Counted from the stretch's first letter, positions 5,084 through 63,127 are shown. The stretch: DNA of 64,000 nucleotides from Paragordius varius (GCA_964247055.1 OZ176058.1:806001-870000), one strand, 5' to 3'. Notes: generated by a model not told the origin, from the sequence alone. Translations and numbers: made by a program.

Positions 5084-7390
5084 TAATTATTTGAAAAAAA
5101 TTATTTTGATTTTATATATTTTTAGTAACTTTTTATCTATATTATATGTAAACAGGCGTGGAGTTACAGATATAAATGCGCCACCATCTGTTAATAATCC
5201 ATCAGCTGTTACTCAACCACCTAACAACACATCTGAGGAAGATACGTTAACCCCTGAAGTATATATTTATAATTTTTAATTTTTTTTATAATTAAATAAA
5301 AATTTATAATATTTAATTTTTTTATATAATTTACAGCTTCACCCCAAGAATAAATTATTCTGTTTTCGAACTTATATGACTCATAGTTAATATGAAATAT
5401 ATCTTTATGGCCCATAGTTATTATTTTTTAATTATTATTTTAAAATTTAAAACAAAATTTTAAATTTTTTTAAAAATATATAAAAATATAAGGGTAATTT
5501 TAATCTTTAAAAACATTTATCTTATTTGAGGTTGAATTTAAATTGTTTAAGGGTGAATTTAATGTGTTTAAGGGTGAATTTGAATTGTTAATGGTATATA
5601 TATAATTTTCTAGGAAATGTATCAACCCATGCTGTTTAACTCTATTTCCAATAATTCTCTAATTATAATTCTTCTTATATTTTAAATTATTTTTAGCAAA
5701 ATTTAAATACATTTTTTAGAAATTTTATTATTATTTATTTGTAAATTATAATTCTTATTATATCATAAATTTTAAATTATTTTTAGCAATATATAAAATA
5801 ATATATTTTAATGTGAATCATAAATTCTCATTATAAACAACAATATTTTTTATAAATTTATAATTTTTTATATTATTTTCATTGCCATTTTTTGCTCATA
5901 TTAAATTTTTACGTTTTGTCTAAATAAATAATTTCAAAAAAATTATAAAATTTTTGTACTTTTTTTAATAATTTTAAACAATTCAATTTTTATTTATTTT
6001 CACTTTTTTAGGAAGGGGATCAACTTTTTTTTAAAATTTTAACTTTTTCTTTCTTTAAAATACATATATTAATTAATAATTTTCTTTATTTAAAATATAT
6101 AAAATTAATTTTTAATTTTACCTATGTAATTTTGTATATAAATTATACAATTTTTATATATTTTTATTTCGTTTTTTTTGAGTTTTTCTCTTTTTTTTTA
6201 ATTTTTTAATTTTACTTTTGAAAAATTAGTTTTTCTCATTAAATTTTTTTTTAATTTTAAACAACCAAACTTGAGTTTTTAATAATTTTATTTTAATTTT
6301 TTATTTAAATTTTTCATATTTTCAAAATTATTTTTTTTAGGAAAGAGATCAACGTACAGTCTTGTTTATGCAACTTTTTTATAATTATTCATTTCTATTA
6401 ACAATTTATATATAATTAGATTTATAAGGTTTTTTTAAAATCTTTTTTTATTGACTTTTTAGGTATATATATATATATATATTAGTTAAATTATTAAAAA
6501 ACTTTTTAAACTTCTTTTGCAAAAGATGATACATATTAATGAATATTATCAACATATTTACCAACTATATCTGAGTTATTTTAAAATATAAATTTATTTA
6601 AATATATATATTTAAATAAAAATTCAAAAATTTCAATTTTTTTTAAATTTTCTATAGGAAAGAGATCAACGTACAGTGTTGTTTATGCAACTTTTTAAAC
6701 TTTTAACTTTATAATATATTAATTTTCTTGATTTTTTTAAAAAAAAATTTAAGTTTTACCTTATTTTTTTCTAATTTTAAATAAAATATTTTTATTTTAG
6801 ATTAATTTTTTCCTTATTTTTTTCAAATTTTACCTTTGAAAAATTAGTTTTTTACAACTTTTTTTATAACTTTTTTTTTAATAATAGTTTTTTACAACTT
6901 TTTTTTTAAAAAATATACAATTTTTCATATTTATTAAAAAAACAATTCAATTTTTTTTTAATAATTTTCGATAGGAAAGAGATCAACGTACAGTCTTGTT
7001 TATTCAACTTTAGGATTCTTATAATTTTACAATTTTTATATTAACTATATATATATATATATATTATACCATTTACAGTTCAAATTTACCCTCAAAGAAA
7101 TTATGTTTTTTTAAATTAAAAATTAACTATATTTTTAAAAATAAAATATTACGTTTAAAATTAATATAATTCTGAAAAAATAATATACTAAGCGCAATAA
7201 GAATATATTTCTTAATAATTATTTATATTAGTTCGAAAACACATAATTATAGGGTGAATTTTAATTGTTATTTTAAAAATATATATAAATATATATATAT
7301 TTTAAAAAAAAATTCAATTTTTTACTTAAAATTCTTTAGGAAAGAGATCAACGTACAGTCTTGTTTATGCAACTTTAGAATTATAGCTAT

Positions 7391-7421
<31 letters not shown>

Positions 7422-10400
7422 TCATTATAAACGCATTTTTTTCAAACTTTAAACAAATTTTATATTTATATAAATCATTAAATTAATATTTTATACTTTT
7501 TAAAAAAAAATTCAGTTTTTTTTTAAAATTTTTTTCTATAGGAAAGAGATCAACGTACAGTGTTGTTTATGCAATTTTTTTTATAACTATTAACTCTCTA
7601 AAATATATAATTTAAATAAAATACTTTTCTATTCAAAACATATAAAATATCTTAAATTTTTTAAAGTTTTTCCTTATTTTTAAAATTTCTTGAATTTTTA
7701 ATTTTACCCATATGTGATTATAATATATTAAAAAAATTTACATTTTTTACAATTTTTTTCCACTTTTTTAACAAAAATTTTCAATTTTTTCTTTAGGAAA
7801 GAGATCAACGTACAGTGTTGTTTATGCAACTTGGCCCCTACGTGGATGAACGTGATATCATGGATTTCCTCCGGGCTCATGGGAAACGGACCCGTGATGT
7901 TCGAGATATTAGACTCATCGTTGATAGTCGAACTCGAAGATCTAAAGGTCTGGCTTACGTGGAATTCCGCGATCCTGATTCGGTCGCTTTTGTAAGTTTT
8001 TTTGCATAAAAAATTGGATTTTTTGGGAAAAACGATAAAAATGGAGTGTTTTTTAGCTTTTTTGGAAAAAAATGAGTGTTTTTGAAGGTTTTTAAGTAAA
8101 AATTTGATAAAAATTGAGTTATTAGAAAAAAATTGAGATTTTGAGGGTTTACGATTTTTTGGGGGCAAAATGACAAAAATTGAGCGTTTTTAATGGTTTT
8201 TAGGAAAAAAATGATTGATTTTTGAGTAATAATTGATTTTCAGGTGTTTTTCAAGATTTTAGGGTTTTTTAAGATTTTTGGCATGTTTTATTTGTGTTTA
8301 AACCTTTTAAAAAAGGTTTAAACACAGTTTTTAGTTTTTTTAGCTTTGAGTTTAAAAAGCGGACGCGAGATGTTTGAGATATAGACTCATAGTTGATAGT
8401 CGAACTCGAAGATCTAAAGGATTGGCCTACGTCGAATTTAGAGATCCTGATTCGGTCGCTTTTGTAAGTTTTTTTTTGAAAAAATTGGTTTTTTGGGAAA
8501 AAACGATAAAAATGGAGTGTTTTTTAGTTTTTTTGGTAAAAAAATGAGTGTTTTTGAAGGTTTTACGATGTTTTCCTTGAAAAAATGGGTTTTTAGACAA
8601 AAATTTGATAAAAATGGAGTGTTTTTGATGGTTTTTTGGTAAAAAATGAGTTTTTTTGATGGTTTTTAGGCAAAAATTTGATAAAAATTGACAAAAACTG
8701 AGCGTTTTTAAGGTTTTGGTTGTTTTTTGGAAAAAAATGAGTGTTTTTGATGGTTTTTAGGCAAAAGATTGATAAAAATTAAGTTATTTTGATGGTTTTA
8801 CGAAGTTTTTCTTGAAAAAACGCTAAAAATGGAGTTACTTTGACGGTTTTTAGGGTGTTTTTAAGAAAAAATGATTGATTTTTGAGGATCAGGTATTTAG
8901 TCAAGTTTTTAGGGTTTTTCAAGTTGATTAGCATGTTTTATTAGTGTTTTAACCTTTTAAATAAGATATAAGGACAGATTTTAGTTTTTTAGCTTTGAGT
9001 TTTAAAAGCGGACTCGAGATGTTCGAGATATTAGACTCATCGTTGATAGTCGAACTCGAAGATCTAAAGGATTGGCCTACGTGGAATTCCGCGATCCTGA
9101 TTCGGTCGCTTTTGTAAGTTTTTTTCGTAGAAAAATGGATTTTTAAACAAAAATTTGACAAAAATGGAGTTTTTTTTTGGTTTTTTTGGAAAAAAATGAG
9201 TGTTTTTGATGGTTTTTAGGGAAAAAATTGATAAAAAATGAGTTATTTTAAGGGTTTTACCTGTTTTTGTCTAGTTTTTAGGGTTTTTCAAGATTTTTGA
9301 CATGTTTCATTAGTGTTTTAAACATTTTAAAGAAGGTTTTGAGACAGATTTTAGTTAAGCTTTTTTAGCATTGAGATTAAATAACGGACTCGAGATGTTC
9401 GAGATATTAGACTTATAGTTGATAGTCGAACTCGAAGATCTAAAGGACTGGCTTACGTGGAATTTCGCGATCCTGATTCGGTCGCTTTTGTAAGTTTTTT
9501 TTGAAAAAATTGATAAAAAAATGGGTTTTTAGACAAAAATTTGGTAAAAAATGATAAAAATGGAGTTATTTTGAGGGTTCTGGGTGTTTTTGAACATTTT
9601 TTGGAAAAAAGATCATTTATAGATTTTTTCAGGAGTTTTGATGTTTTTTTTTCCTAAAAATAATTCGTATTTTTGTGAAAAAATTTAAAAGTTTTTAGCG
9701 TTTAAATTTGTTTTTTTGTTTTATTAGTGTTTAAACCTTTAAAAAAGATTTTAAAGGCATATTTTAGCTTTTTTAGTGTTGTATGTATATAAAGGACCCG
9801 AGATGTTTGAGATATACCATTTACAGTTCAAATTCACCCTTAACAAATTCACCCTCAAATAAATAACACGATTTTTAAGATTAATAATTACCTATATTTT
9901 TATATATTTTTAAAAAATAAAATTTTGTTTTAAATTAAAATAATACTGAAAAAAATAAATAATTATGCCATAAAAATATATTTAATTTGAATAATGAGTT
10001 ATATTAGTTCGAAAACACACATAATTTATTTTTAGGGTGAATTTGAACTGTAAATGGTATATTTGACTCATATAAGCAATAATTTCGTTCTATAATTTAT
10101 TATATAAATATTAAAATTCTCACATTTTTTGTTTTATCTATTTTACAAGGCTACTCTACCTTGCTTAATGGGCAAAAACTTTCGTGGACGACCCACATTA
10201 TATTTTGTTTTTAATTATTAATATTGTTTTACGTTTTTAATACCTTTTTTTAATTCATTTTTTTGCATACTTTTCTCCCCTAATTCTCTCAAATAAACAA
10301 ATTTTGATATTTATTTAACATATTTTACCATTTTACAATTCAAATTCACCCTTAAACTATTTATTCAAATTCCCACCATAATTTAATATATCTTTTTTAA

Positions 10401-13400
10401 GATTAAATATTATCACCTATATTTTTTTACATACTTTAAAAACAATCAAATTATGTTTAAAAATCAAATAATACTAAAAAATAATAAACTATGCGCTATT
10501 AAAATATGTTTCATATTATAATGAGTTATATTAGCTGCCTGAAAACATATTATTTATATTTTTAAGGTGAATTTGAATCGTTTAAGGGTGAAATTGAATT
10601 GTTCAAGGATAAATTTAAATTTTTCAAGAGTTAATTGAATTGGTCGAGGGTGAATTTGAATTGGTTAAGAGTGAATTTAAATTGCTCAAAAGTTAATTGA
10701 ATTTGTTCGGGGTGAATTTGATTGTTCAAGGGTAAATTTGATTTGTTCAAAAGTAAATTGTTCATGGCTAAATATTAATTGTTCAAGAGTTAATTGAATT
10801 GTTCGAGGGTGAGTTTGAATTGTTCGAGGGTGAATTTGAATTGTTCAAGGGTGATTTGAATACAAGGGTGAAATAAAATTTTCCAAAAGTTAATTGAATT
10901 TTTCAAGGATGAATTTGAATTGTTCAAGGGTAAATTTGAATTGTTCAAGGGTGAATTAAAATTGTTTAACGGTGAATTTGAATTGCTTAAGGGGGTATTA
11001 TGAACTGTTCAAGGGTTAATTAAAATTGTTTAACGGTGAATTTGAATTGCTTAAGGGGGTATTATGAACTGTTAAGGGGTGAATTTGAATTGTTCAAGGG
11101 TAAATTTTAATTCTTCAAAAATGAATTTGAATTGTTCAAGAGTAAATTTGATTTGTTCAAAAGTAAATTGTTCATGGCTAAATATTAATTGTTCAAGGGT
11201 GAATTTGAATTGTTCAAGGGTAATTTTGATTTGTTCAAGGGTAAATTTAAATTCTTCAAAAATGAATTTGAATTGTATAAGGGTGAATATCAATTGTTCA
11301 AGGTTGAATTTGAATTGTTCAAGGGTGATTTGAATACAAGGATGAAATAAAATTTTTCAAAAGTTAATTGAATTTTTCGAGGGTGAATGAATTGGTTAAG
11401 GGTGAATTTTAATTCTTCAAAAATGAATTTGAATTGTAAACGGTATATTATCCATTTTTAACATTTTTTCATTTTTATCTATTTTAAAAGGCTACTACCT
11501 TACTTAATGGGCAAAAACTACGTGGCCGTCCCATTATAGTTCAACACAGTCAAGCTGAAAAAAATAGGATTGCCGCATCACTTGTAGCTGGTTTTCCCAC
11601 TCAAACTGGTTCATTACAGTATGAGTAAGTTTTTTTTATATATTTTTATAATACCCTTGAATAATTCCAATTTACCCTTTGAAGAATTTAAATTAACCTT
11701 AAAGAATTCAAGTTGGTCCTTAAAAACTTTAAATTTACTCTAAAAATAATATTATTTTACCTTGAAAAGTTTAAATTTACTCTTGAATAATTTATATTTA
11801 TTCTTGAATAATATAAATTTACTCTAAATAATATACCATTTACGGTTCAAATTTACTCTTGAACAATTTAAAATTACCCTTGAACAATTTAAATTTAATC
11901 TTGAATAATTCAAATTCATTCTTGAACAATTCAAATATACCCTTGAACAATTCAAATTGACCCTTGAACAATTCAAATTCACACCCTTAAACAATTTAAA
12001 TTTACCCTTAAACCGTTTAAATTCACCCCTTGAATAATTAAAAATTTAAATTTACCCCTTGAACAATTCTAATTTACCTTGAATTCTAATTTCCCTTTAG
12101 CAAAATTTACCTTTGAACAATTTAAATTCACTCTAAAAATATTATGCCATTTACAAATTAGATTCACCCTTGAACAATTCAAACCCTAAAAGTAAATTTT
12201 ATGTTTTCGGGCATACTCATCATTAAAATATTATTTTTTCAGTATTTTTATGATTACGTACAAAATTTTCATTTTAAAAAATATAAAAAAAATATAGGAA
12301 TATTTAATCTTAAAAAACACATAATATATTTGAGGGTGAATTTAAATTGTTCGAAGGTGAATTTGTATTGTTTAAGGGTGAATTTGAACTGTAAATGGTA
12401 TACATAATATATATAACTTCTAGTAAATATTGAAATTATACTATGGACAAAACGTAAAAATATAAAGACTAACATTTTTTTATCAAAATACAACCCAACC
12501 ATACTTTTTAAACCTTAAAGATGTATATAGGTAATACAATTACAGTAAAAATTCAAATTATACTATTAAAACGTAAAATTATAAAGACATCTATTTTTTT
12601 TCAAAACACAACCCCATACTTTATTATAAACCTTAAAAATGCCATTGAAAACACAATTACAGCAAAAATTGAAATTATACTATGGAGAAAACATAAAATT
12701 ATAAAGACAGCTATTTTTTTCAAAAGACAATCCCATACTTTTTTAAACCAACTCAATTACAGTTTTATACTAAGGACAAAACGTAAAAATATAAAGACTA
12801 TCATTTTTTTATCAAAAGACAACTCAGCCATACTTTTTAAACCTTAATTTTTCTTTAATTTGCCATGTAATACGATTGTAAAATATTAAAACTTTAGAAA
12901 AATATTTTATTTGTCTATATATTTGCTTTTGTCCATATAATTTTAATTTTTACGATATATATACATATAACTTTTAATCACCTTGAACCCATTTAAATCT
13001 TAATTTAAGTATATACTTTAATGTATTTTTTTATATTAATTTTTTTTTGTTTTATTAATTATTAATTTATTTTATTACAATCTAATTTTAGCTCCCTTGT
13101 GATAAATAACTCCATTGGTGGCGCATTAAACGCGGGCGGCGTTCAATCAGCTGGTGGTCCGAAACAACCAACACCCCTGAAATTATATGTGGGTACTTTG
13201 CATCCCGAAATAACGGAAGATATGTTGAAGGCAATTTTTGAACCTTTTGGAAAGGTATTTTTGAATTTTAATCAAAAAAATTATTAAAAATAATTAAATT
13301 TTTATTAAAATTGGTTAAAAATGGTTTAAAAATAAGTGTAAAGATGAAAAAATCATTTAAAATGTTGTAATTTTGGTGAAAATTGGTTAAAAATTGGTTA

Positions 13401-16400
13401 AAAATTGAATAGTATAACATATTTAACAAACCTCTTAACGTAAAAAATTAAAAAAATGGGTAAAAAATCTGTTTTAGGGTGAAAAAATATTAAAACTATG
13501 AAATTATTAAAAATGGTTAAAATGATTAAAAACGCTTAAAAAATATGTTTAAAGTGAAAAAAATGGTTAAAAACGCTTAAGAAATTCGTTTAAATGGTTT
13601 AAAATAATTTAAAAAAATTATATGTGGGAACTTTGCATTCCGAAATAACGAAAGATATGTTGAAGGCAATCTTTGAACCTTTTGGTAAGGTATTTATTAC
13701 AAAAAACTAATAAAAATTTAAAAAAATAGTTGAAATTTTAATAAAAATTAGCTAAAAATGGTTAAAAACGCTTAAGATATACGTTTAAATTGAAAAAATT
13801 GGTTAAAAATAATATAAAATGCTTTTTTAATGGTTTAAACTGAAAATTTTTTAAAAAAATTATATGTGGGTATTTTGCACCCCGAAATAACGGAAGATAT
13901 GTCGAAGGCAATCTTTGAACCGTTTGGAAAGGTAAAAATTAAAATCTAAAAATAGTGGATTATAAATAAAAATTGGTTAAAAACGCTTAAGAAATACTGA
14001 ATTTGATAATTGTGAGAAATGAGAGTTAAAAGTGGTAAAAATGGTATATTTTTTGTGAAATAAGCTTAAAAATTGTTTAACATAGTGTGAAATTCTCAAT
14101 GATTATTATTTTTTAAAATTTGGGTTAACCTCCTTGAAATTGTATGTTGGCATTTTGCATTAACGCAAAATATGTTGAAAGCAAGCTTTGAACCTTTTTG
14201 GAAAGGTAAAAATGTGTTGATATAGTGAAATTTGGTAAATTTTAATTAAAAATAGTGAAATTGTAATATTAAAGAAAAAAGTTAAAAATGGTGTTAAAAA
14301 CGCTTAAGAAATACGTTTAAAGTCAAAAAATTGGTTAAAAATTATGCAAAATGTTAAATCTTTTTTTAATGGTTTAAAATAAATTAAAACTGTTTTGAAA
14401 CAACTATCCCACTCTGTATTATATATGGGAACTTTGCATCCCGAAATAACTAAATATATGTTGAAAGCAATCTTTGAACCTTTTGGAAAGGTAAATTATG
14501 ACAAAAATTATATTAAAAAAAAATAGTTGAATTTTAATTAAAAATTAGCTAAAAATGATTCAAAAATAAGTTCGAAGGTTAAAAATGGTAAGATACACAT
14601 TTAAAAATAGCTTTTTAATGAAAATTGGTTAAAAATTGAATAGTATATTACACAAACCTTTTTCGGGTTAAAAAAAATTGTAAAAAATTGCTAAATATGT
14701 TTGAGAGTGAAATATTTTTAATTAAAAATAGTTAAATTTTGATTAAAATTGGCTAAAAATGATTCAAAAATAAGTTTAGAGGTAAAATATCATTTAAAAT
14801 AATGTAATTTTGGTGAAAATTGGTTGAAAATATGCCAAAAAGCTTGAGAGCCACACAATGGGTAAAAATATTATATAGTTGGTTAAAGTTGTTAAAATTA
14901 ATTAATTTTGATTTAAAATACGACTGACTCTTTGAAATTCTATGTGGGAACTCTTTTAATAAGAACAATTTTTAGTATTTTATTTTAAATATATTTTTAT
15001 AAATAATATCTTTATTTTTATTAAAGTTTTATTTTATGTTATAATTTTAGATTGATTATATAACTTTAATTATGGATCACGAGACCCGAAAATCACGTGG
15101 GTACGGATATATTCAAGTTAGTTTATAAATAATATATATATATATATAATTTTTAGTATTTTTTATTTATTTATAATAAAATAATCTATTTCAAATATTT
15201 TTTAAATGATAATACTTTAAAAATTATTAATTTAGTAAAAAACATATTTTTTGGACCATCAATCTTATAAAGACAATATTTTTTTAAGACATGGCTCTAT
15301 ACTTTTGAAAATTTTTAATTTTTTTAAAAATCAATAACTTGAAAAGTATGTAATCGAAGAGTAAAATTTGCCAATATTTTAATAATTTTTTATATTTTAA
15401 AATTCTAATCAAATAATTTATATATAAAATATAAAAATTATAACCTTTTTAATAAAAATTTCATTATTTTTTAATTCTATCGTTATTAAGAAAGTATTTT
15501 AACGGTAAAAACTGCATTTATACGTAAGAGTACAAAACGTAAAAATATAAAGACAAATGTTTTATTTTTAAAAGACATTAACCATACTTTTTTAAGTAGC
15601 CTTGTAATATTTTTTCTATAAAACTCTTTAATATTATTAAAATTTTAAAATATATGATTGATTGTGTGTTACCATTGTACAGTAAAAATAGAAATTATAC
15701 GGACAAAACGTAAAAATATAAAATTAAAAATATTTCGAGATTAATTATTTTTATTTTTAAGGATTTTTTTTAAATTATTTTTTTTAAATTTTTTTAAAAT
15801 CAAACTATATTTTATTTTCTAGTTTCACGATTCTGAAGACGCTAAACGCGCTCTTGAAAGTTTAGATGGTTTTGAATTGGCTGGTAAGGCTATGCGAGTA
15901 AGTACTCACGATTCTGAACAAGTAAATACTTCATCAGCAAAGGCTGAAAAAAGTCCAGAAGAAACTAGAAATAGTAGTCGAGACTCTAAGAAAACGAGCA
16001 AAAAGGACAATAAAGAATGTAAGTTTTTTGGTCTTTTAAATATTTTTATAGATTTCTTCAAGAGTTTAAGAAAGTTTTGTATGATTTTTTATCTTTTTAT
16101 CAGAGTATTTTAGCTGAAAATATTGATTTTACATGTGTAGAGTAAAAATATTGTTTTTTTGAGTATTTTTGATCTTAAATGTAAAAATTTTGAGCAGTTC
16201 TTGAACTGGCTGCTAAGGCTATGCGAGTAAGTACTCATGATTCTGAACAAGTAAATACTTCATCAGCAAAAGCTGATTCTATTAGCAAAAGTCCTGAAGA
16301 AACTAGAAATAATAGTCGAGACTCTAAGAAAACGAGCAAAAAGGATAATAAGTTTACGTCCTTTGAAAAATGTAATTTTTTTGGTTTTTTATTGCTTTCT

Positions 16401-19400
16401 TGCGGGTTTTTAAATGGAAGAAGGGGGAATTTGAATTTTTACAGAGTTTATAAAGAGTTTTTTTGATATTTTACTCTTTAGATAGTATTTGAGCTGAAAA
16501 TATTGATATTAGATGGTTTTTGAGTGTTTTTTTGATCCTAAATGTAAAAAATTTTGATTTTTTGAGCAAAAAGCTTATACGAGTAAGTACTCACGATTCT
16601 TAACAAGTAAATACTTCATCAAAATCTGATTCTATTGGCAAAAGTCCTGAAGAAACTAGAAATAGTAGCGACTCTAAGAAAACTAGCAAAAAGTACAATA
16701 AAGAAACGTCCTATGAAAAATATATATTTATTGGTTTTTTAATTTACAAATGTTTTTAGATGGGATTTTTTGGATTATCTTCTCTCTAGAGAGTTTTTGA
16801 GCTAAAAATATTAATTTTAGATGGTTTTTGAGTTAAAAATAGGATTTTTCGAAGTTTTTTTGATCTTAAGTGTAAAAAATTTGAACTGGCTGGTAAGGCT
16901 ATGCGAGTAAGTACTCACGATTCCGAACAAGTAAATACTTCATCATCAATAGCTAAGAAAAGTCCAGAAGAAACTAGAAATAGTAGTCGAGACTCTAAGA
17001 AAACTAGTAAAAAGGACATTAAAGAATGTAAGTTTTTTGGTTTTTTAAATATTTTTAGAGTTCTTGAAGAGTTTTTTATGTTTCTTTTTTTGGAGTATGA
17101 AAATACTGATTTGAAAAAAAGCTAAAAGGACAATAAAAAAACCATAGAAATATGTGAGTTTTTTGCTTTTTTTAAATTTTTTACAGAGTTCAAGAGTTTT
17201 TTTAATTTTTTGTTTTATTAGTAGTATTTGAGCTAAAAATATTAGTTTTAGAGAGCTTTTGAATGTTTTTATCTTTAATGTAAATATTTTGAGCATTTTT
17301 TGAACTGGCGGGTAAGGCTATGCGAGTTAGTACTCACGATTCTGAACAAGTAAATACTTTATCAGCAAAAGCTGAGAAAAGTCCAGAAGAAACTAGAAAT
17401 AGTAGTCGAGACTCTAAGAAAACAAGCAAAAAGGACAATAAAGATTGTAAGTTTTTTGGTTTTTTAACACAAAACATCAATTTTTCGGTTTTTTCTTTTT
17501 ATAGAATATATTTGGCCTAAAAATATTAATTTTAGATGGTTTTGAGTAAAATAAGATATAGAAAACGAGCAAAAAGTACAATAAAGAAACGTCCTTTGAA
17601 AAATGTAAGTTTTTTGGTTTTTATTATATTTTTTAGGGGTTTTATGAAAGGTTTTTTGGTTTTTTCTTTTTAGAGAGTTTTTGAGCTAAAAATATTGATT
17701 TTAAATGGTTTTTCAGTTATTTTTGGACATTTTTTTAGTTTTTTTGATCCTAAATGTAATTTTATCTTTTTATAGAGTATCTGAGCTAAATATTGATTTT
17801 AGATGGTTTTTGAATAAAAATATTGATTTTTGAGTATTTTTGATTTTAAATGTAAAAATTCTGGGCATATTTTGAACTGGCGGGTAAGGCTATGCGAGTA
17901 AGTATTCCAGATTCTGAACAAGTCAATACTACTTTAGCAAAAGCTGAAAAAAGTTTTGAAGAAACTAGAAATAGTAGTCGATACTCTAAGAAAACGAGCA
18001 AAAAGGATAATAAAGAAACGCCCTTTGAAAAATGTAAGTTTTTTGGTTTTTTATTGAATTTTTTAGGGGGGATTTTTTGGATTTTTTCTCTTTAGAGAGT
18101 ATTTGAGCAAAAAATAATAATTTTTGATGGTTTTTGTGTATTTTTGGGTATTTTTTAAGTTTTTTTCATCTTAAATGTAATTTTACCCTTTGGATAGTAT
18201 TTGAGCTTAAAATATTGATTTTCAAAAAAGCAAAAAGGACAATAAATAAATGTCCTTTAAAAAATGTAAGTTTTTTGGTTTTTTAACTCAAAACATCAAT
18301 TTTTTCGGTTTATTTTTCTTTTTATAGAATATATTTGATCTAAAAATATTGGTTTTAGATGGTTTTCGAGTTAAATTATTGATTTAGAAAACGAGCAAAA
18401 AGGATATTAAGGAAACGTCCTTTGAAAAATGTAGTTTGTTGGTTTTTTATAATATTTTACAGAGTTCAAGAGTTTGAAAAGAGTTTTTTTATTTTTTTTA
18501 TAGAATATTTGAGCTGAAAATATTGATTTTAGATGGTTTTTGAGTAAAAATATTGATTTAGAAAACGAGCAAAAAGGATAAAGAAACCATTGAAAAATGT
18601 AATTTTTTTGGTTTTTTATGATTTTTTTGCGTGTTCTATAGAGTTTAAAAAGAGTTTTTTATTAGATAGTATTTGAGCTGAAAATATTTAAAAGGTTTTT
18701 GACTAAATATGGTATTTTTTGTAAAAAGGCTATGCGAGTAAGTACTCATGATTCTGAACAAGTAAATACTTCATCAGCAAAAGCTGAGAAAAGCAAAAGT
18801 CCTGAAGAAACTAGTAATAGTAGTCGAGACTCTAAAAAACGAGCAAAAAGGAAAATAAAGAAACTCATTTGAAAAATGTAGGTTTTTTTGGTTTTTTAAC
18901 TCAAAACATCAATTTTTATAGATTTCTTTAAGACTTTTAAACGAATTTGTATGATTTTTTTCTTTTTATCAGAGTATTTTAGTTGAAAATATTGATTTTA
19001 CATGGTTTTAGAGTAAAAATATTGATTTGTTAAAGTTTTTTGATCTTTAATGTAAAAAATGTTGAGCATTTTTTGAACTGGCGGGTAAGGCTATGCGAGT
19101 AAGTACTCATGATTCTGAACAAGTAAATACTTCATCAGCAAAAGCTGAAAAAAGTCCTGAAGAAACTAGAAATAGTAGTCAAGACTCTAAGAAAACGAAC
19201 AAAAAGGATAATAAAGAATGTAAGTTTTATGATTTTTTAATTTAAAAGGTTTTTTAGATGGGTTTATGAGATTTTACTATTTAGAGAGTATTTGAGGTGA
19301 AAATATTGAATTTAGATGGTTTTTGAGTGTTTTATCCATCATAAATGGAAAAGGGTTTTTGACCAAAAAAATATCTCATGAAGCTATTACTAATCAACAA

Positions 19401-49900: not shown

Positions 49901-52900
49901 TATCTTTAATTATCTTTATTTTTATATGAGAAACTTGGTTTTAGCTGATAAGGATATATGGTTGTTTAAAATATCAAAAATTATCAAAAAAATTTTAGTT
50001 TAATCTTACTATACGAATTAGTAATATGTACATTTGAACTGATTTTGGTTTATAAAGTTTTATTATTGGTGAATGGAGAAAACATTTTTTGAAGAAATAG
50101 GATTTTCCTAGCTTTGTATATATATGGAATGTATAATTTACGCAAAAAATTAAATAATTTCATATTAATTTAATAAAAATATATTTTTTCACGCATTAAA
50201 TTTACAGAATTTGAAATTCAGTAATTTATATTATAACACGGACAAAACGTTAAAATATAAAGACAAATAATTTTTTTGAAAAGACAACCCCATATTTTTT
50301 TAAACCTTAATGATTCTCTATAACCTATTTAATTACGATGGTAAGTTATTAAATTTTAAGCATTATATTATATATATACCACACTTTGCAATATTAAATA
50401 GGGAGATTTATTTAAAAAATAAAGATTTACAAAGTATGGGGTTGTCTTTTAGAAAATAATATTTGTCTTTATATATATTTTTACGTTTTGACCTCACGAA
50501 TAATTTCAATTTTTTCTGTAATACCATACCAGGCATTATCTTTAAACTGTATAAAAGAATGTAATTATGATTAGTTATTGTAAAGCTATATTCTTTCTAT
50601 AATAATTTCTATTTTCAAAATATTTTTTTTAGTAAAATATTAAATTTTTTCAAGTTATAAATATACTATTGTTTAGTATAATTTGTAAGATATCAAATAA
50701 AAAAAGTTTTTTTTAAATGGTTATCTACGATTTATCTTTAACAATGTAGATCAATCTTAATAAATGCTAAAATTGTGGGAAAATTTAAAAACCTTAATTA
50801 TTTTATGGGAAAAATATTTATGGTTTAATAAATAATATTTAATTTTTTTATAACAATGGATACTTTTATAGGTTGCTTATATTTAATACTAATTAAAATT
50901 GTATTACGGTTAAAATTGAAATTATACGGACAAAACGTTAAAATATAAAGTCAATTTCCAAAAGACAACCATACTTTAACTTGATTTTTTTAATAAACTT
51001 TTGAATTTGCAAAGTGTGAAATAGAGATATATTTAGTACCATTTATAATTCAAATAAACTCTTAAACAATTCAAATTTACCCTAAAAATAATTTATGTAT
51101 TTTGGGCTAATATAACTCATCATTATATGAAATATATTCTTATGGCATATTTTATTATATTTTCGTATTATGTTAAGTTTAAACTAAACTTCATTTTCTT
51201 AAAATATATTAAAAATATAGGTAATTTTTAACTTAAAAAAATACACATTTTATTTTAGGGTGATTTAAATTATTCAAGGGTGAATTTGAATTGTTCAAGG
51301 GGAAATTAAATTGTAGAATGCATTTTACTAATAAAATTAATTACATATATTTTACAATCGTAATTTAATAGCTTATATAGGAATAATTAAGGTTCAAAAA
51401 GGTATAGGGTTGTCCTTTGAAAAAAATTTTTTTTCATATTCTTACGTTTTGTCCATATAATTCAATATTTACTATAATATTTTGTAGTTTTGTAAGTTTA
51501 TGTATACCATTTTAAACAATTTAAATAAATTATATGTTTTTTAAGAATAAAAATTACCTTTATTTTTATATACTTTTAATAAATTATGTTTAAAATTAAA
51601 GTAATACTAAAAAAGTAATAAACTATGCGCCATAAAGATATATATTTCATATCAATAATGATATTAGTTCGAAAACATATAAATAAATTTTAGGATTAAT
51701 TTGAATTCAAGGGTGAATTTGAATTGTTAATGGTATACTTTATTTTTTTGTAAATTAATTAACCATCAATTTTATTGCCCTTTAGTTTATAAAAAAAACT
51801 TTTTTGTATGAATTTTTTAGGAAGCTTTGAAATTGAATCCAAAAGATACGACTGTCTTACATTGTTTGGGTTGCTGGTAATATAATTTATTTAATTTTTA
51901 TTTGATAATAAAAAGTTTTTTGAATGAAATTTTTATCGTAATGATTTAAAATATGTATAAGCAAATTTTAATTTTAAATATTTTTAATAAAAAATAATAA
52001 TTGGATAAGCGTAATTAAAATAATAAGTTTAAACAATATTTATATTCTTTGATTTTATTTTTTTAATAATATATATTTTTTTTTCAAATCTCTAATAATT
52101 GGAAATAATACAGTGAAAATTATACGGACAAAACATTAAACCTAAAAGACAAATTTTAAACCATAACAATTTAAGAAAAAAGAATTAAAATTTAAAGACA
52201 AATATTTGTCTTACAAAATCACCCTATTTTAAAAAATAAAATAGATTTTAGGTTATGATTTTATAAAAAAACGAGTAATATCAAATCTAATATATACCAT
52301 TTACACCTTAAATTCACCGTCGAAAATTTCAAATAAACCCTAAAATAAGACAGGTGTGTGTTTATAATTAAAAATCACTTGCATATTTTATATATTGTTA
52401 TAAAATGAAATTTGTTCAAAATTATTAAAATAAAAAAATATGCCATAGTGTTATATTTTATATTAATAATTCAATATATTTGTTTGCAAACACATAATTC
52501 ATTTTTAAGGGGAAATTTGAATTGTTCGGTAGATTTGAATTGCAAATGGTATATTTCATTAAATTCACACATAAAAATCATAAATAAAATAAAAAGTATT
52601 GCCGTTTTAAAAAAAAATATTTTTCGATAATTTGTCTGTGTAATCCAAAATGTTAATTGTAGATTAAATGTATGTATATATATATTTACTGATCTCATTA
52701 TTTTTTAATTTATTTCGATTCTTTATTTAAACCAATTTAATTAATACAAGTTATAAAATATATTTTTAAAATGAATATAAAAATATTTTTTTATGTCTCA
52801 CCAAAAAATAGGCATTTTGAATTAGGACGTCCTTACTATACCAAATAATATAATTCAAAAATTATTTTCATGAAATTTGAAAAAAAATTTTATTTAAATA

Positions 52901-55900
52901 AATTATTTTATACGAGATAGTTTTTAATTTTCCAACAATAAATATAATTATTTTTAAATTATTAAAACTAATATATTTTTAAAATTAAAACTTTAAAATT
53001 ATTGAAATTTTAAAAATACATTTTTTAAAATTATTGAAACTTAATAATTTTTTTTTAATAAAATTTTTTATGTCTCACATCAAAATAGGCATTTTGAATT
53101 AGGACTGCTCTCATATTACAAATAATATATGATTTAACAATTATTTTTTAATTAAAATCTGAATTTTTTTTTCAAAATATATTATTTTACGAATTTTTTT
53201 ATAATTTATCTATCAATAATTTAAATAATTATATTTTTTTAAATTATTAGAACCTAAAAATTAATTTAATAAAACATATTAAATATGTCACCAAAAAATA
53301 TGCATTTTGAATTAGGACATCCTTACTATACGCAAATAATATATTATTTTGATTAAAAATATTTTGAATTCGAGTTTATTTTTTAATTTTTCTATTAATA
53401 TAAATTTTTATATTTTAAATAATTATATTTTTTAAATTATTGAAACTTAAAAATAAATTTTTTTTAATAAAATTTTTTATGTCTCACCTCAAAAACAGGC
53501 ATTTTGAATTAGGACGTCCCTACAACACAAATAATATGATTAAAAAATGAATTTTTTATTTAAATATATTATTTGATATGAGTTATATTATTATATTTTT
53601 AAAAAATATTTTCTAATTTTTTTTAAAAAATATTGTTTGTGTCATCAAAAATGATTTAAAAATTATTTTTCATTAATTTAAGTTATTAAATAAATTATTT
53701 AATACGATATTTTATAATTTTTCTATTAATATAAATATATATATATATATTATATATTTTTATATTATTAAAACTTTAAATATTTTTTCCTAAATTAATT
53801 TAAAAATTTTTTAAATAAATTTTAATAATATTTTTTATGTCTCACCTCAAAATAGGCATTTTGAATTAGGACGTCTTTCCTGGACAGCTAGGAAATTAGC
53901 TCAAGTCCTTACAGGTCATATCTATGATTCAACATTACAAGATGCCTTAAATTATTTGCTAAAAGCGGAACAAAGTTAGTTTTTTAAAATTCTTAAAAAT
54001 TTAAAAAGTTTTTTTCAAAAATTTTATAATTTCGTAAAATATATAGGTTTGAAATTAATTTTATTTATTATCTATATATACTTTTTTAGTTTTGTATCTA
54101 ATGTTTAATTTTGAATTGGTCAGTTTTAATCAAAAAATATTTAATACTTGCATTATTTGCAATCACTATTGATTAAAAAATATTTAAAATTAAAAATTTG
54201 TAATTTTGTTTTTATATATATAGATATACCATTTACAGTTCAAATTTACCCTTGAACAATTCTAAATTACCCTAAAATAAATTATGTTTTTTCGAGCTAA
54301 TATAACTCATCATTAATAAGAAATATATTTTTATGGCATAGTTTAATATTTTTTTAGTATTATATTAATTTTAAATGAAATTTTTGAAAATATAAAAAAA
54401 TATAGCTAATTGTTTTTCTTAAAAACACAAAATTCAATTTTGTTCAAAGTTGAAGTTAAATTGTTCGAAGGTGAATTTGAATTGTAAATGGCATATTAAA
54501 ATATAATAAGGTCAAATGTTCAAAACTTTGATAGCAAAAAATTTGATATCATTAATTTTATCTTAATAAAAATAGTATTTAAAGAATATATATATTATAG
54601 ATTATTTTTAATTTTTGATTTTATTTAATATATTATAGTGGAACCATTTTTCTACAGTCGAAATTTGTATATGATTGCGCTAACGTATAAAACTAAGGGC
54701 GATACACAACAAGCTAAGCAATATTGCCAAATTTTATTGGAAAAATTTAAGGCAAAAACCGACGAAGATTTTGAAGTTATATTAATTAAAATTTTAAATT
54801 TTATTATTGAAATTTTTTAATAAAATTTTTTAAAAAACAAAAAATAAATGTTATTTGGGGTAGTTATTGAATTGTAAAAATTAAATATTTCAGGAATTAA
54901 ATGGAAATGAAAATATTTTTAAAAAAAATTGAAAAAAAATGTAACTAACATTTTTATTTTTATAATTTTGCCTTAAAAAACTTATCTTGCGTAATGGTTT
55001 ATAAAACTCTTAAATACATAATTTTTTATTGCAATTGAATTAGATTTTTATACGGTTTTTATTTAATATTAATCAATTGAATTGAAAAATTAATTTTACA
55101 GTAAAAATTGAAATTAAACGGCCAAATGTAAAAATATAAAGACAATCCTTTTTTCTAATAGACAACCCAATGCTTTTTCAAACCTTAATTTGTCCCATAT
55201 AAGCTATTTAATTACGATTGTAAAATTGATTGTGTTAGTAATATCTATATTCTCTATTTGACACTTTTCACTATTAAATAAAAAGTAAGAATAAAATATA
55301 AAAAAACGTATGGTTAGCCTTTTAGAAAAAAAATATTTGTCTTTATAATTTTACGTTTTGTCCGTATAATTACCTCAATATATTTAACCAATGAATATAC
55401 CATTTACTGTTCAAATTCACCCTAAAATAATTATATCTATATTAAGATTAAAAATTACCAATATTTTTATATATTTTTAAAAAATAAAAATTTTGTTTTA
55501 AATTAAAATAATACTGAAAAAATAATAAAGTTTACCATTAACATATATTTCATATTAATAATAAGTTATATTAGTTCGAAAACATAATTTATTTTTAGGG
55601 TGAATTTGAATTGTTTGAGGGTGAATTTGAAATATAATATATATATATATAATATATATAAAATTATTATAACTTTTAAATTTTTTTATTGAAGCTTAAA
55701 TTTTTCAATTTTTTTAATAATTAGGTATAATAAGATTTTTGAAAACCAGTTAGCCTAAAGACTATTTTAAGACTCTTCAGTAAATGTAAGAAAAAATAAA
55801 AAAATCTAAGGACTGATAACAATATATTGCTAATAAATCAAAATATTGGGTAAAATGGTTATTCATATTTAGTAAATTAGTTATTTAACATAAATTTATC

Positions 55901-59653: not shown

Positions 59654-60869
59654 TAGATTATTTATTTAATTATTGTGGATATAAAGAATATATACATTTA
59701 TTCGAACATTTAAAACTGGACAACATATAATTAAAAAGTTTTACATAATCTAAAAAATATAAATATGCCAATAATGTGGTGCATTGCTAATTTCATATGT
59801 ATTTATAATTATGAAAATACAGTATGCATTTTAATGGTTGCTTATTTCACACTATAGTATGGCAATTTGCAAAATCACAGTAGTGTATGGAAAAAACAAC
59901 AAAATGTTAAATAAACCAATTAATTCCTTTCTTTTTTCAGTGACTCTTATGTGTTTCGAATTGCCCAACTATACAGTGTGAAATAAGCAACCATTAGAAT
60001 ACATATTATATTTACAAAATATAGCATATAATATCTACGTTTCGGTTAAAAAAAACCCTATTGGCATCAATAAATGCGAAGTACAGTGAAAAACAGACAA
60101 ATAAAAGTACAATATATCTTTCTTAAACTATTTTCAATATAAAATTTTTCATAATATCATAGTTTTGTGTTGATAAATAAGGATTAGAGATGTAAATTGG
60201 GAATAAACTTAATTATATCATTGATATTGTAATTCTATAGTTAATATTGGAGTAAAAAATAGTATGGTAGTCTTTTAAAATAAAATATTGTAATGTTTAC
60301 ATTTTGTCCATATTATAATTTGAATTTTTATTGTAATTATACAATCAAAACGTATAAAATAAAAGATTTGTAAAACAACCACCATATTTACTATGATAAT
60401 TTCATGTATAACTCATACTTTTAGTTTGCTAAAGAGTAGAAATATGAATTAAACTCGATTTAATAGTTAGTTTATAAAGAAAATACAATATGCACATATC
60501 TACTGCCCTATTCGTATAATTATTGTTAGCCAATTGATAATACAGTAACGTATGTTATAAAAGAAATTGTGTCCAAAATTAAGCAAACATATTATAATGT
60601 AAGATAGAAAAAATTGTTTTGTTCAAATGTTGTTATATTTGATTTTCCATACACTAATGTGTTACCAATTAGCCAACTAATATAACGTGAATTGGTTACA
60701 TTTATAGTCTAGTGTTTCAAAGTTTTAAAAATATAATATCTTTCATTTTTACGTTTTGTCTGTATTATATTTTGAATTTTTATTGTAAAATGTAAAACAT
60801 AATTAATTTGTTATAAAATTATTATTTAGAAAAAAAAATTATGATATCGGGATATAATAAGCCATCTAT

Positions 60870-63127
60870 TTATTCGTTTTCCATGACTATATTGCCTATA
60901 ACAGTGCCTTCTACCACATTCTGTGAGTTATCGCCACTCCTTTGATGTAGCGCCGTGGTTTCTACTATAATCTATATACCAAAAATAAAATATTTAAATA
61001 TAAATTTTTTAAAATTTTTATTAATATCAATTTTCAAATTTATTTTTAAATAGTTTAGAAAAATTTTAAAAATTTTATGCATGAAAATTATGGTAAAAAT
61101 GATTATATATACCGCAATTTAAATAAAAAGTCTATAATAATTTTAATATCCTTTTCTCTATATGCCAATATAAGGGATATTTAAAATATGAATTTAGGAT
61201 CTATATCCCTTAAACAACCCTAATAAACCATTCCATATAAGTGTTGATTGGAATATCATAAGTCATATAAATATATATATATATATATAGTATGCTTTAA
61301 ACTATTTACATGTTTGCCTTACTTTATATGATCAAATATAGTATGTGTTCAATAACACGATATTAAACTTATAACTATATAAAAAATTTAAAAAAAAATA
61401 TTTTTAAACAATTAACTTTCGAAAATTAAATTTACACTCAAGTATTCTAATATTTATAATTAGATATATTCCAAACAGTTTTTTAATCTTTTGACTAAAT
61501 TTATCTTATAAAATTCAAAAAATTGTTTTGAAAAAATATATCTTTACCTTTTCTCGAGACGGATCTAAGATGAGTTTCCCAAAGTTATGGCGATGTTTAA
61601 GTTTGTTCAATGCATCTGGTAACTATTGGGGTAAAAAACAACTTTTGGTATAAAAATTAAAAATATTTATAAGTATAAATGGTATGCAGTGAAAAAATTT
61701 AGAAAACAGATATAAAAGACGAATTATATATATATATATATATATATATAATCACAGTTTTTAGTATAAGGAGGAAAGATACAAATTTATATAAACCACG
61801 ATTGTATTCATTTTGGTTAAATGGAAAATTTCCTAGTTTAAAAAATTGTTTAGAAATTAAAAACATTTTATAGTACCTTTTGTCACTATAATCTTATTTT
61901 TATCGTCAAATAAATATCAGTCTTTTACTTGTTAAATGGTATTTATATATAATCTCTAGCTTTTATATCGTATCTTTTATATTAAATTTCACTGTAAAGT
62001 TAATATCAGTCTTTTAATTATAAATTTTTGGCTTCACGTTTTTAAATTCCATTTTTTACATATTTACAATAACTTCATCAAAAGCATAGATAGAATCAAT
62101 AATGAGATATATTTTGATTGTTAAGTTTTGTTATATAATTTTAATATTTACAGTAAAATAATTTTATATGTTGTCTTTATAATTTTATTTTTTTTAACAT
62201 ATATATATACTTCATCAAAAGCCCAGATCAAACAATAACGAGATGTTTTATATTTAAATTTTATTTTTCACGGTTGACAAAAATTACTAGTAATCGAAAA
62301 TTCACCCCAAAATTCATATAATTTTAGCTGAATTATAATTGCAATCATATAAGATATGATTTTATTGTTACGTCTTACTATATAATTTTAATCTGTACCG
62401 TAAAATAACCTTATAAACTCTTTTATAATTTCATTTTTTAGATATTTATAATAAATGCTTCATCAAAAGCCCAGATAGAATCAATAATAAGATATATAAT
62501 TTTTACGTTTTGCAATATAATTACTGTAAAATAATTTTATATGCTGTCTATATAATTTTACTTTTTACATATTTATAATAAATACTTCTCAAAAGCCCAG
62601 CTAGAATCAGAATATTAAATTGTTACGTTTTGTTTTATAATTTTGATTTTTATTGGAAAATAATATTACAATAAAAATTGAATTTATACGGATAAAACGT
62701 AAAAACATAAAGACAAATATTTTTTTCTATAAGACAACCATACTTTTGAAACCTTTTTTTTTCATATAAGCAATTTAATAAAAATTAAAATATAGAATCG
62801 ATTATATTAGTTATATCTCTATTTCGCACTTTGCCATTTAAAACAATGAGTATATTGAAATAAATCAAAATTATTAAAGTATGGTTGTTTTTTAGAAATA
62901 AATATTTGTCTTTATATTATTAAGTTTTGTCCGTATAATTCAGTTTTTACTGTATATGTCTTTATAATTTCATTTTTTACTATATACATATATATATGTA
63001 TATATATATATAATAATTACTTCATCAAAAGCCCAGATAGAATCAATAATGGGATGCAGTTTTCCCTTTTTATACCATTCACATAAATCGTGCATTATAT
63101 GGCGTAGTAAACGCAACGGTTTATCTC
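60870..63127 (-). CDS. VAT1L: 3' part of a VAT1/VAT1L-like (MDR family quinone oxidoreductase-like) gene; 5' exons lie beyond the window
   Basis: Exons 63127-63021 (..KGKLHPIIDSIWAFDE), 61622-61548 (LPDALNKLKHRHNFGKLILDPSREK), 60971-60870 (IIVETT...VMENE*). Matches the VAT1-like C-terminal pattern IKPVVDSLWALEEV..AMQRIHDRGNIGKLILD. Confidence 0.75.
62070..62612 (-). repeat. Four donor-side copies of VAT1L-like exon 63127-63021
   Basis: ACTTCATCAAAAGCCCAGATAGAATCAATAAT (+ strand) variants at ~62072, 62208, 62457 and 62582; the real copy is 63019-63050. Confidence 0.9.

What the first reader, a model, noticed from the sequence alone, without database searches (positions are those of the whole stretch)
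6009..62612. 'Exon echoes': arrays of half-exon + splice-site copies beside exons in all four genes
Seen: at least 10 exons (7 RBM39, 1 MIER, 1 RMDN, 1 VAT1L-like) have 1-12 same-orientation copies of one of their ends in the adjacent intron, roughly 60 copies in total. Polarity is strict: acceptor + exon start lies upstream, exon end + donor lies downstream. The exon-derived part stays recognisable while the spacers diverge. Established: tandem exon duplication normally copies whole exons (e.g. mutually exclusive Dscam-type arrays); I do not recall a description of systematic half-exon arrays. Inference: this is either a genome-wide mutational process that expands introns at exon boundaries, or a functional system (splice-site decoys, or reservoirs for recombination or gene conversion).
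Basis: partly seen in the sequence, partly recalled or inferred. Interest (0 to 1): 0.92.

Follow-up and report, generated by a model that had tools for sequence, protein, structure and literature searches.

The report
Introns built from exon-edge copies
Four genes in this AT-rich animal genome have introns largely made of tandem copies of their own exon–intron junctions. These copies look like decaying by-products of local duplication that still exchange sequence with the real exon, not a designed splicing system.

Summary
I confirm 14 junction-anchored arrays holding 46-47 half-exon copies ("echoes"): RBM39 has 33 plus 1 truncated, across 7 exons. MIER has 6, RMDN 4, and the VAT1-like gene 3. 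Together they cover about 22 of the 64 kb.

- **Origin.** Every array has one shared breakpoint in the exon. That means one founding tandem duplication across a junction, followed by amplification of the unit.
- **Polarity.** The strict polarity follows automatically from tandem duplication.
- **Relative.** The closest RBM39 relative I could fetch (Gordionus sp., Nematomorpha) has an 8.9-kb gene with roughly 200-700-nt introns in this part and no echoes. The arrays are therefore lineage-specific. Short ancestral introns plus selection against whole-exon copies can explain why only half exons are seen.
- **Decay.** 15 of 33 RBM39 echoes carry frameshifts or stops, changes run GC to AT, and some GT donors are lost.
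- **Not independent of the live exon.** Exon-derived parts diverge 2-10 times less than spacers. One echo is 77/78 identical to its exon inside flanks 27% diverged. Variants are mosaic. Half of all changes are synonymous, against 25% expected if neutral.

I read this as ongoing gene conversion with the selected exon. There is no RNA evidence, because the single read-laying run was lost to a filter. First-stage notes report the same pattern in many other windows of this genome. I rate it a new variant of a known kind, of moderate interest.

The parts
5970..7796 (+). Acceptor-side echo array of RBM39 exon D. It holds 5 copies of the polypyrimidine tract, the AG and the first 36 nt of the exon, at 6341, 6658, 6975, 7340 and 7542.
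   Evidence: The 36-nt islands are 94-100% identical while spacers are 19-25% diverged. The spacing of 317, 317, 365, 202 and 255 nt includes a 634-bp two-unit block.
7797..7991 (+). RBM39 live exon D (RRM1). It starts after an AG at 7795-7796 and ends before GTAAGT at 7992.
   Evidence: 73% identity to Gordionus RBM39.
7992..9830 (+). Donor-side echo array of exon D. Copies of the last 108 nt plus GTAAGT lie at 8357, 9006 and 9383. A copy near 9790 is truncated by a transposon-like insertion.
   Evidence: Differences are 12 synonymous, 1 missense and 2 stops. The four-gamete test gives P=0.001.
10132..10205 (+). Single acceptor-side echo of RBM39 exon E (live exon start at about 11491).
   Evidence: Identity is 83%, and a 2-nt insertion breaks the frame.
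13161..14831 (+). End of RBM39 exon F (to 13254) and its donor-side array of 4 echoes at 13615, 13857, 14132 and 14397.
15823..19333 (+). RBM39 exon G (15823-16018, phase-1 donor GAAT|GTAAGT) and its donor-side array of 7 echoes at 16201, 16580, 16880, 17298, 17870, 18726 and 19071.
   Evidence: The exon end was fixed by phase matching to the exon H acceptor and by the P0035 alignment.
19740..21580 (+). RBM39 exon H (to 19903) and its donor-side array of echoes at 20181, 20535, 21052 and 21439. Echo 21052 carries a gene-conversion tract.
   Evidence: Echo 21052 is 77/78 identical to the live exon. Its flanks are 27% diverged and resemble those of echo 20181.
21700..23990 (+). RBM39 exon I (about 22678-22793) with 2 acceptor-side echoes (21987, 22223) and 3 donor-side echoes (23217, 23393, 23936).
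25137..27016 (+). End of RBM39 exon K (to 25212) and its donor-side array of echoes at 25515, 26211, 26567 and 26912. Units of about 570 nt have since lost internal segments.
34349..36433 (-). MIER exon (about 34715-34852) with 5 acceptor-side echoes at 35159, 35533, 35796, 36007 and 36393, and 1 donor-side echo at 34349-34397.
   Evidence: The exon reads VENFLYHINEW..., following the ELM2 exon at 37467-37646.
52736..53881 (+). RMDN exon start (53840) with 4 acceptor-side echoes at 52787, 53064, 53288 and 53473. All share the same junction.
62040..63050 (-). VAT1-like exon end (...HPIIDSIWAFDE, donor GTAATT, near 63004-63050) with 3 donor-side echoes at 62569, 62442 and 62072.

Best explanation
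Shown:
- The echoes are products of lineage-specific local tandem duplication. In each array, one founding duplication of about 200-650 bp began inside an exon and ended in the adjacent intron.
- That unit was then amplified, sometimes several units at a time, into as many as 7 extra copies.
- The copy that stays joined to the rest of the exon remains the live splice junction. The other copies necessarily lie in the intron on the matching side, which produces the polarity.

Inferred:
- Ancestral introns were short. The Gordionus ortholog has introns of roughly 200-700 nt here.
- With introns that short, most tolerated duplications of this size include exactly one junction. Copies containing a whole exon would be spliced in and removed by selection.
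- The echoes are not used as coding sequence and they decay.
- While they stay similar enough, their exon-derived segments exchange short tracts with the live exon by gene conversion.
- This coupling to a selected sequence keeps the echoes more similar than the spacers and biases their differences toward synonymous sites.
- Very AT-rich spacers also scramble faster through indels.
For: Single origin and amplification:
- All copies in an array share the same exon breakpoint and junction sequence.
- Multi-unit blocks are visible in D_acc (634 bp) and in MIER, where units about 850 bp apart share variants.

Scale:
- 57% of the window lies in local direct repeats. Adding up the junction-anchored arrays among them gives about 22 kb.

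Lineage specificity:
- The Gordionus RBM39 locus (8.9-kb gene, GC 25%) has no exon-touching repeat.

Decay:
- 15 of 33 echoes carry a frameshift or stop.
- Private changes run GC>AT 38 against AT>GC 19.
- GT is lost in 3 of about 28 donor echoes.

Coupling to the live exon:
- Echo-echo divergence in the exon part is 0.48 times that of spacers.
- G/C sites are 79-93% conserved in the islands against 37-80% in spacers of the same alignments.
- Echo 21052 is 77/78 identical to the live exon, with flanks 27% diverged.
- Incompatible site pairs in D_don give P=0.001.
- Shared variants are 24 synonymous against 3 non-synonymous.
- All changes are 50% synonymous against 25% expected from the mutation spectrum, z=7.8.
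Against: - No RNA data, so use of the echo splice sites is untested (one search failed).
- The synonymous excess (50%) is higher than the roughly 35-40% I calculate for a model where only the live exon is constrained. Some constraint on the echoes themselves is therefore needed. I attribute it to two-way conversion, but occasional translation cannot be excluded.
- Intact and broken echoes show the same private synonymous fraction (40% and 41%). This does not fit a simple picture of coupled echoes followed by decaying ones.
- Recombination signal is significant in only one array (D_don) and borderline in K_don.
- In the G and K arrays, where alignments are reliable, islands are only slightly better conserved than spacers.
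- About 15 kb of the window (42-52.7 kb and 57.8-62 kb) has no arrays at all. Duplication is therefore not uniform, and some gene or junction bias remains possible.
Confidence: 0.62

Rival explanations
1. Junction-targeted mutagenesis. The founding duplications arise preferentially at exon-intron junctions or in transcribed gene bodies. Possible causes are transcription- or splicing-associated breaks, or template switching between GC-richer exon sequence and AT-rich intron.
For: - 13-14 anchored founding events stand against about 3 unanchored non-transposon duplications with units of 150 nt or more, each with only 2 copies.
- My rough expectation for uniformly placed 400-nt units is about 1 anchored to 6 unanchored.
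- Large stretches of the window carry no arrays.
Against: - Detection is biased. Arrays without a complex exon-derived island fade below BLAST detection, and islands may themselves promote amplification.
- Short ancestral introns make junction-spanning events the default inside genes.
- One 64-kb window is too little data to decide.
Confidence: 0.17
2. The echoes are kept because they work in RNA processing. They could act as decoy or auxiliary splice sites: U1 binding sites that suppress premature polyadenylation in very AT-rich introns, or decoys that tune unproductive splicing.
For: - Most donor echoes keep an intact GT with a near-native 5' splice site.
- Donor echoes outnumber acceptor echoes, about 29 to 17.
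- The introns are 80-90% AT.
- Exon-derived parts are better conserved than spacers.
Against: - Conservation covers the whole exon-derived tract (up to 148 nt) and stops at the duplication breakpoint. It is not centred on the splice site.
- GT is lost in 3 of about 28 echoes, and intron positions +3 to +6 vary freely.
- Echoes drift GC to AT.
- The equally AT-rich Gordionus gene has none.
Confidence: 0.1
3. The echoes are, or recently were, genuine alternative coding exons (cassette or mutually exclusive type), and the synonymous bias reflects direct selection on translated sequence.
For: - Synonymous excess is seen in private echo changes: 41% against 23% expected, z=5.
- D_don echoes 9006 and 9383 differ from the exon only at synonymous sites.
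- Echo 9009-9113 has an AG in front, GTAAGT behind, and 105 open in-frame nucleotides.
- Gordionus has an intron about 15 nt from the D_don breakpoint.
Against: - Copies are half exons that lack the partner splice site.
- 15 of 33 are broken.
- Inclusion would duplicate part of RRM1.
- The other breakpoints do not match intron positions in Gordionus.
Confidence: 0.07
4. Assembly artefact: mis-joined or over-expanded repeats.
For: The arrangement was not verified on single long reads (one search failed).
Against: - Copies differ by many private substitutions and indels.
- 81-91% of sampled 31-mers of two stretches of the gene (24200-27800, with the K array, and 24295-25214) are present in four runs from two samples.
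- First-stage notes report the pattern in many windows.
Confidence: 0.03

Closest known systems
Tandem genomic (internal gene) duplication affecting splice sites. This covers the Rogers AGGT model, Hellsten et al. 2011 and Gao & Lynch 2009, as reviewed in PMC3443670.
   Same: A local head-to-tail duplication of a gene segment creates extra splice sites, and correct splicing removes the extra copy, so coding sequence is preserved.
   Different: In that model an exonic AGGT is duplicated and a new intron is born. Here existing introns are lengthened, the unit spans an existing junction, and units are amplified to as many as 8 copies (live plus 7 echoes) across many junctions of many genes. I found no description of this as a dominant mode of intron growth.
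Tandem exon duplication and mutually exclusive exon clusters (Dscam type; Kondrashov & Koonin 2001 and Letunic et al. 2002, cited from my own knowledge).
   Same: Same-orientation local copies of exon sequence lie inside the gene.
   Different: Those copies are complete exons with both splice sites and an intact frame, and they are used in mRNA. Here every copy is a half exon with one splice site, and about half are broken.
Gene and adjacent pseudogene pairs that exchange sequence by gene conversion, for example CYP21A2/CYP21A1P (my own knowledge).
   Same: Non-functional tandem copies stay partly homogenised with a selected gene. The patterns are mosaic, and transfer of pseudogene variants into the gene has a potential cost.
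   Different: Here the partners are fragments of 20-150 nt inside the same gene's introns, present at many junctions. Conversion is inferred from sequence patterns only.
Higher-order tandem repeat (satellite-like) arrays evolving by unequal exchange.
   Same: Multi-unit block duplications, variable unit length, no age gradient along the array, and rapid indel turnover in spacers.
   Different: The arrays are seeded by unique exon-intron junction sequence inside genes and sit against a live exon.

Membership tests
Tandem segmental duplication array | Head-to-tail copies in the same orientation, with homologous spacers between them. | tested here: met
   Direct alignments link successive units including their spacers, for example 25532-25863 against 26567-26899 at 85%.
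Tandem segmental duplication array | All copies share the same duplication breakpoint or junction (single founding event). | tested here: met
   Every echo in an array starts or ends its exon homology at the same base and shares the junction sequence.
Mutually exclusive or cassette exon cluster (Dscam type) | Each copy is a complete exon with both an acceptor and a donor. | tested here: not met
   Copies cover only 21-148 nt of one exon end and carry one splice site. No whole-exon copy was found.
Mutually exclusive or cassette exon cluster (Dscam type) | Copies keep an open frame under purifying selection. | tested here: inconclusive
   15 of 33 copies have frameshifts or stops, yet private changes are 41% synonymous against 23% expected.
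Mutually exclusive or cassette exon cluster (Dscam type) | Copies appear in mature mRNA. | not testable with these tools
The listed RNA runs hold almost none of the sampled words.
Intron creation by AGGT tandem duplication | A new intron is bounded by a duplicated exonic AGGT. The intron starts with a copy of the downstream exon and ends with a copy of the upstream exon. | tested here: not met
   The polarity is the opposite: upstream-exon copies carry donors and lie after the live donor. The junctions duplicated are those of existing introns.
Concerted evolution by gene conversion with a selected master copy | A tract of near-identity to the master sits inside diverged flanks. | tested here: met
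   Echo 21052 is 77/78 identical to exon H, and its flanks are 27% diverged and closer to echo 20181.
Concerted evolution by gene conversion with a selected master copy | Phylogenetically incompatible (mosaic) sites occur beyond what recurrent mutation gives. | tested here: inconclusive
   D_don gives P=0.001 and K_don gives P=0.05. F, G, H and D_acc are not significant.
Functional splice-site decoys or U1 recruitment sites | The splice-site motif itself is conserved above the background of the copy. | tested here: not met
   GT is lost in 3 of about 28 donor echoes, and intron positions +3 to +6 vary. Conservation follows exon homology, not the motif.

The most novel reading that the evidence does not exclude
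This lineage (probably a hairworm) may have a duplication process that acts preferentially at exon-intron junctions, and the resulting echo arrays may be retained because they matter. One possibility is that regularly spaced U1 or splice-site decoys protect extremely AT-rich introns. Another is that a standing pool of exon fragments exchanges sequence with the live exon under selection by proxy. Either way, introns would grow by copying their own borders rather than by transposon insertion.
Probability: 0.15. Interest if true: 0.85.

Novelty: new variant of a known kind. Interest (0 to 1): 0.56.

Why it matters
**Intron growth.** Intron growth is usually credited to transposons. Here more than half of a 26-kb gene, and most of its threefold size excess over a relative's ortholog, comes from tandem copies of its own splice junctions.

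**Splice-site choice.** Each live splice site is left with up to seven decoys that match it over tens to more than a hundred nucleotides, most at 80-100% identity. This is a natural experiment: local sequence cannot tell the sites apart, so pairing across the exon must.

**Gene conversion.** The synonymous-biased, mosaic variation among copies suggests that non-coding fragments can be held under indirect selection through gene conversion with an essential exon. This could be tested with population data.

Tried and rejected
**RNA and long-read check.**
I therefore have no splice-junction, read-level or sister-species evidence.

**Close relatives through protein searches.**
- An exon-sized query found only 52-62% identical fragments.
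- The window's organism is not in those collections.
- P0010 has no gene on record, but its longer isoform P0157 gave the Gordionus locus.

**Conservation profile by fixed offsets from the donor, and a multiple alignment of K units.**
- Both were misleading, because indels and lost sub-segments shift the register.
- I replaced them with comparisons based on local alignments.

**Conserved islands at 34349-36433 as a non-exon control.**
- I first took these islands for intergenic sequence.
- They turned out to be echoes of a MIER exon on the minus strand, so the control failed.

**The 28-nt repeat next to the MIER exon at 42353/42451.**
- It is intronic and tRNA-like, not an echo.

**The 27-bp array after exon C (4098-4738).**
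- It shows no convincing derivation from the donor.

**Two-regime model (intact echoes constrained, broken ones neutral).**
- Not supported. The private synonymous fractions are equal.

**Other checks.**
- Rfam found nothing in the window.
- Literature searches found no description of the pattern.
- Gao & Lynch 2009 is not held in the library.
Full report
**What is there.**
The window is very AT-rich, with GC of 10-28% in 2-kb bins. It carries four intron-rich animal genes. A stop-free-stretch scan and Pfam identified RBM39 on the plus strand (RRM exons) and an ELM2 exon of MIER on the minus strand.

Full-length RBM39 homologs came from a representative search. The closest is named RNA-binding protein 39-like of Gordionus sp., Nematomorpha. 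tblastn against these homologs fixed the RBM39 exons:
- D 7797-7991
- E about 11491-11610
- F to 13254
- a small exon at 15051-15116
- G 15823-16018
- H 19740-19903
- I about 22678-22793
- J to 24468
- K to 25212
- L from about 27583

I set the end of exon G at GAAT|GTAAGT. Only that phase-1 donor matches the phase-1 acceptor of exon H, and the P0035 alignment runs past the earlier GTAAGT. The organism is probably a hairworm. This is an inference from 73% identity to Gordionus in exon D, against 55% to a damselfly.

**Checking the observation.**
I BLASTed each exon against the window, ran short-word self-BLAST and made alignments. These give 33 echoes plus one truncated copy for seven RBM39 exons.

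The apparently intergenic conserved islands at 34349-36433 are echoes of a minus-strand MIER exon that reads VENFLYHINEW... It has 5 acceptor-side copies and 1 donor-side copy. RMDN has 4 acceptor-side copies. The VAT1-like gene has 3 donor-side copies.

All 14 arrays obey the stated polarity, and no copy contains a whole exon. The 31-mers of two stretches of the gene (24200-27800, with the K array, and 24295-25214) are held at shares of 0.81-0.91 by four runs from two samples. The copies are therefore real sequence.

**Anatomy.**
Within each array every echo begins or ends its exon homology at the same base and shares the same junction sequence with the spacer. Each array therefore goes back to one founding duplication, about 14 events in all rather than 47.

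Later growth copied existing units, sometimes in blocks. D_acc shows 634-bp two-unit blocks. MIER units about 850 bp apart share variants. The K array is best read as units of about 570 nt that later lost internal segments. Identity to the live exon shows no gradient with distance.

Local direct repeats spaced 100-1500 nt apart cover 36.8 of the 64 kb. Adding up the junction-anchored arrays gives about 22 kb of this, and about 14 kb of the 26-kb RBM39 gene.

**Polarity and the restriction to half exons.**
A tandem duplication of a segment that starts in an exon and ends in the next intron must leave the extra exon-end-plus-donor copy downstream. The mirror case must leave the extra acceptor-plus-exon-start copy upstream. 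The polarity therefore carries no information.

The Gordionus RBM39 locus (L001, gene 8.9 kb, GC 25%) has introns of roughly 200-700 nt in this part of the gene. It has only seven direct-repeat alignments in 15 kb, and none touches an exon.

The arrays are therefore lineage-specific and account for most of the threefold size difference. Units of 200-650 nt are as long as the likely ancestral introns. Inside genes, a duplication can hardly avoid a junction. Copies with a whole exon would be spliced in and selected against. My rough geometry predicts whole-exon events to be about as frequent as half-exon ones, so their absence (none among about 14 founding events) points to selection.

**Are the echoes functional coding or splicing elements?**
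They decay:
- 15 of 33 RBM39 echoes carry frameshifts or stops.
- Private changes are GC>AT 38 against AT>GC 19. This implies an equilibrium GC near 25%, close to the window's overall composition (about 20%).
- GT is lost in 3 of about 28 donor echoes, and intron positions +3 to +6 vary.
- Conservation spans the entire exon-derived tract and stops at the duplication breakpoint, rather than peaking at the splice site.

None of this looks like selection for a splicing signal.

**They are not simply neutral either.**
- In alignments that pair units, exon-derived columns diverge less than spacer columns. For echo-echo pairs the figures are 9.3% against 19.5%, with 6% against 22% gap columns.
- G/C sites are 79-93% conserved in islands against 37-80% in spacers of the same alignments.
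- The contrast is about tenfold in the most AT-rich arrays (D_acc, H). It is slight in G and K, where alignments are reliable. Part of it is therefore rapid indel scrambling of low-complexity spacers.
- MIER echoes 35159 and 36007 keep shared variants, yet differ at only 2 of 38 island positions inside a region whose spacers align at about 70%. This points to fast spacer turnover.
- Echo 21052 is 77/78 identical to exon H, while its flanks are 27% diverged and resemble echo 20181. This is a conversion tract.
- D_don has four incompatible site pairs against 0.08 simulated (P=0.001). K_don is borderline, and the other arrays are not significant.

**The synonymous bias noted by first-stage readers.**
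I counted each variant once:
- Variants shared by several echoes are 24 synonymous against 3 non-synonymous.
- Private variants are 48 synonymous against 69 non-synonymous. That is 41%, against 23% expected for the same arrays and mutation types (z=5).
- All variants together are 50% synonymous against 25% expected (z=7.8).

Consider a model in which only the live exon is constrained and echoes drift. By my calculation this gives at most about 40% synonymous, and about 33-35% for arrays with 3-5 echoes. The excess is therefore real, although "almost only synonymous" holds only for D_don (12 synonymous, 1 missense, 2 stops).

Intact and broken echoes do not differ in this respect. I attribute the excess to two-way conversion that couples echoes to the selected exon. 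Under this idea, harmful echo variants are costly when they are copied into the exon. This is an inference. Occasional translation of some echoes is not excluded. For example, echo 9009-9113 has an AG in front, GTAAGT behind, and 105 open in-frame nucleotides.

**Is duplication aimed at junctions?**
Anchored founding events (13-14) outnumber unanchored non-transposon duplications with units of 150 nt or more (about 3, each with two copies). About 15 kb of the window has no arrays at all. This hints at a gene or junction bias.

Three things weaken the hint. Arrays lacking a complex island fade from detection. Islands may promote amplification. One window is too little data. I leave this as the main rival explanation.

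**Comparison with what is known.**
The nearest described process is tandem genomic or internal gene duplication that creates splice sites (review PMC3443670). There, an exonic AGGT duplication creates a new intron with the opposite internal polarity.

Whole-exon tandem duplication (the mutually exclusive exon type) fails the membership test, because the copies here are half exons.

Searches of the held literature found no description of introns built from arrays of their own junctions. These included two hairworm genome papers that never mention introns or tandem repeats. First-stage notes report the same pattern in many other windows of this genome. They are unchecked, and they cover this genome only.

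**Verdict.**
This is a real and striking genome architecture. It is best explained as a mutational by-product filtered by selection, with continuing gene conversion against the live exon. It is a new variant of a known kind and of moderate interest. RNA-seq junction counts and a genome-wide age-matched census are the decisive missing tests.

Noticed in passing
window 2339-2586, 3259-3717, 5322-5606, 7019-7306, 9812-10130, 10324-12406, 21496-21741, 31749-31955, 36657-37191, 39201-39465, 40190-41957, 51027-51748, 55343-57150: A dispersed repeat family in both orientations carries an internal 21-bp minisatellite (GGTGAATTTGAATTGTTCAAG) and a recurrent end motif (...CTGTAAATGGTATA). One copy truncates the fourth exon-D donor echo near 9815. 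It is probably a non-autonomous transposon.
   Followed up: partly
window 12425-12749, 27990-31077, 42240-42310, 62100-63200: A second small dispersed element (TTACAGTAAAAACTGAAATTATACGGACAAAACGTAAAA...TATAAAGACAA) is present in both orientations. It makes up much of the spacers between the VAT1-like echoes.
   Followed up: partly
window 42340-42480 (minus strand): A 28-nt repeat pair (GGTTATAACTGTCAAAATTGGGTTTGAA) lies 35 nt after a MIER donor. It is followed by a tRNA T-arm-like sequence, so it may be a tRNA-derived element. It is not an exon echo.
   Followed up: partly
window 7797-7991, 11491-13254, 15823-22793 compared with L001 7524-10555: Intron positions differ from the Gordionus ortholog. 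Gordionus splits the exon-D equivalent (intron at ...KDV|RDIRL..., about 15 nt from the D_don breakpoint) and fuses the E and F equivalents. The G/H/I region is cut at different places. This suggests active intron gain and loss between these lineages.
   Followed up: partly
window 16350-16373, 16700-16720, 18015-18033, 18870-18890: Four of the seven exon-G echoes carry an extra in-frame 15-nt segment (AAACGTCCTTTGAAA) just before the donor. The live exon and the other three echoes lack it. Either the live exon lost five codons after the array formed, or one echo lineage gained them and was then copied.
   Followed up: partly
window 38076-38264 and 38438-38622: A 160-nt duplication at 91% identity, 362 nt apart, lies in a MIER intron and has an acceptor-like TTTTCCTTAG|GAAATG on the minus strand. 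No open frame or source exon was identified, so I could not tell whether it is another echo.
   Followed up: partly
window 47984-48778 (+): A 265-aa open frame (GC 35%) has only a weak sub-threshold Pfam hit (clamp_Gag1-like, E=0.002). It sits in a 10-kb stretch that has no tandem arrays.
   Followed up: no
window 4098-4897: A 27-bp tandem array (about 23 copies, with higher-order periods of 140-500 nt) starts about 25 nt after the exon-C donor (CCTAG|GTTTTT). I found no convincing homology to the exon end.
   Followed up: partly
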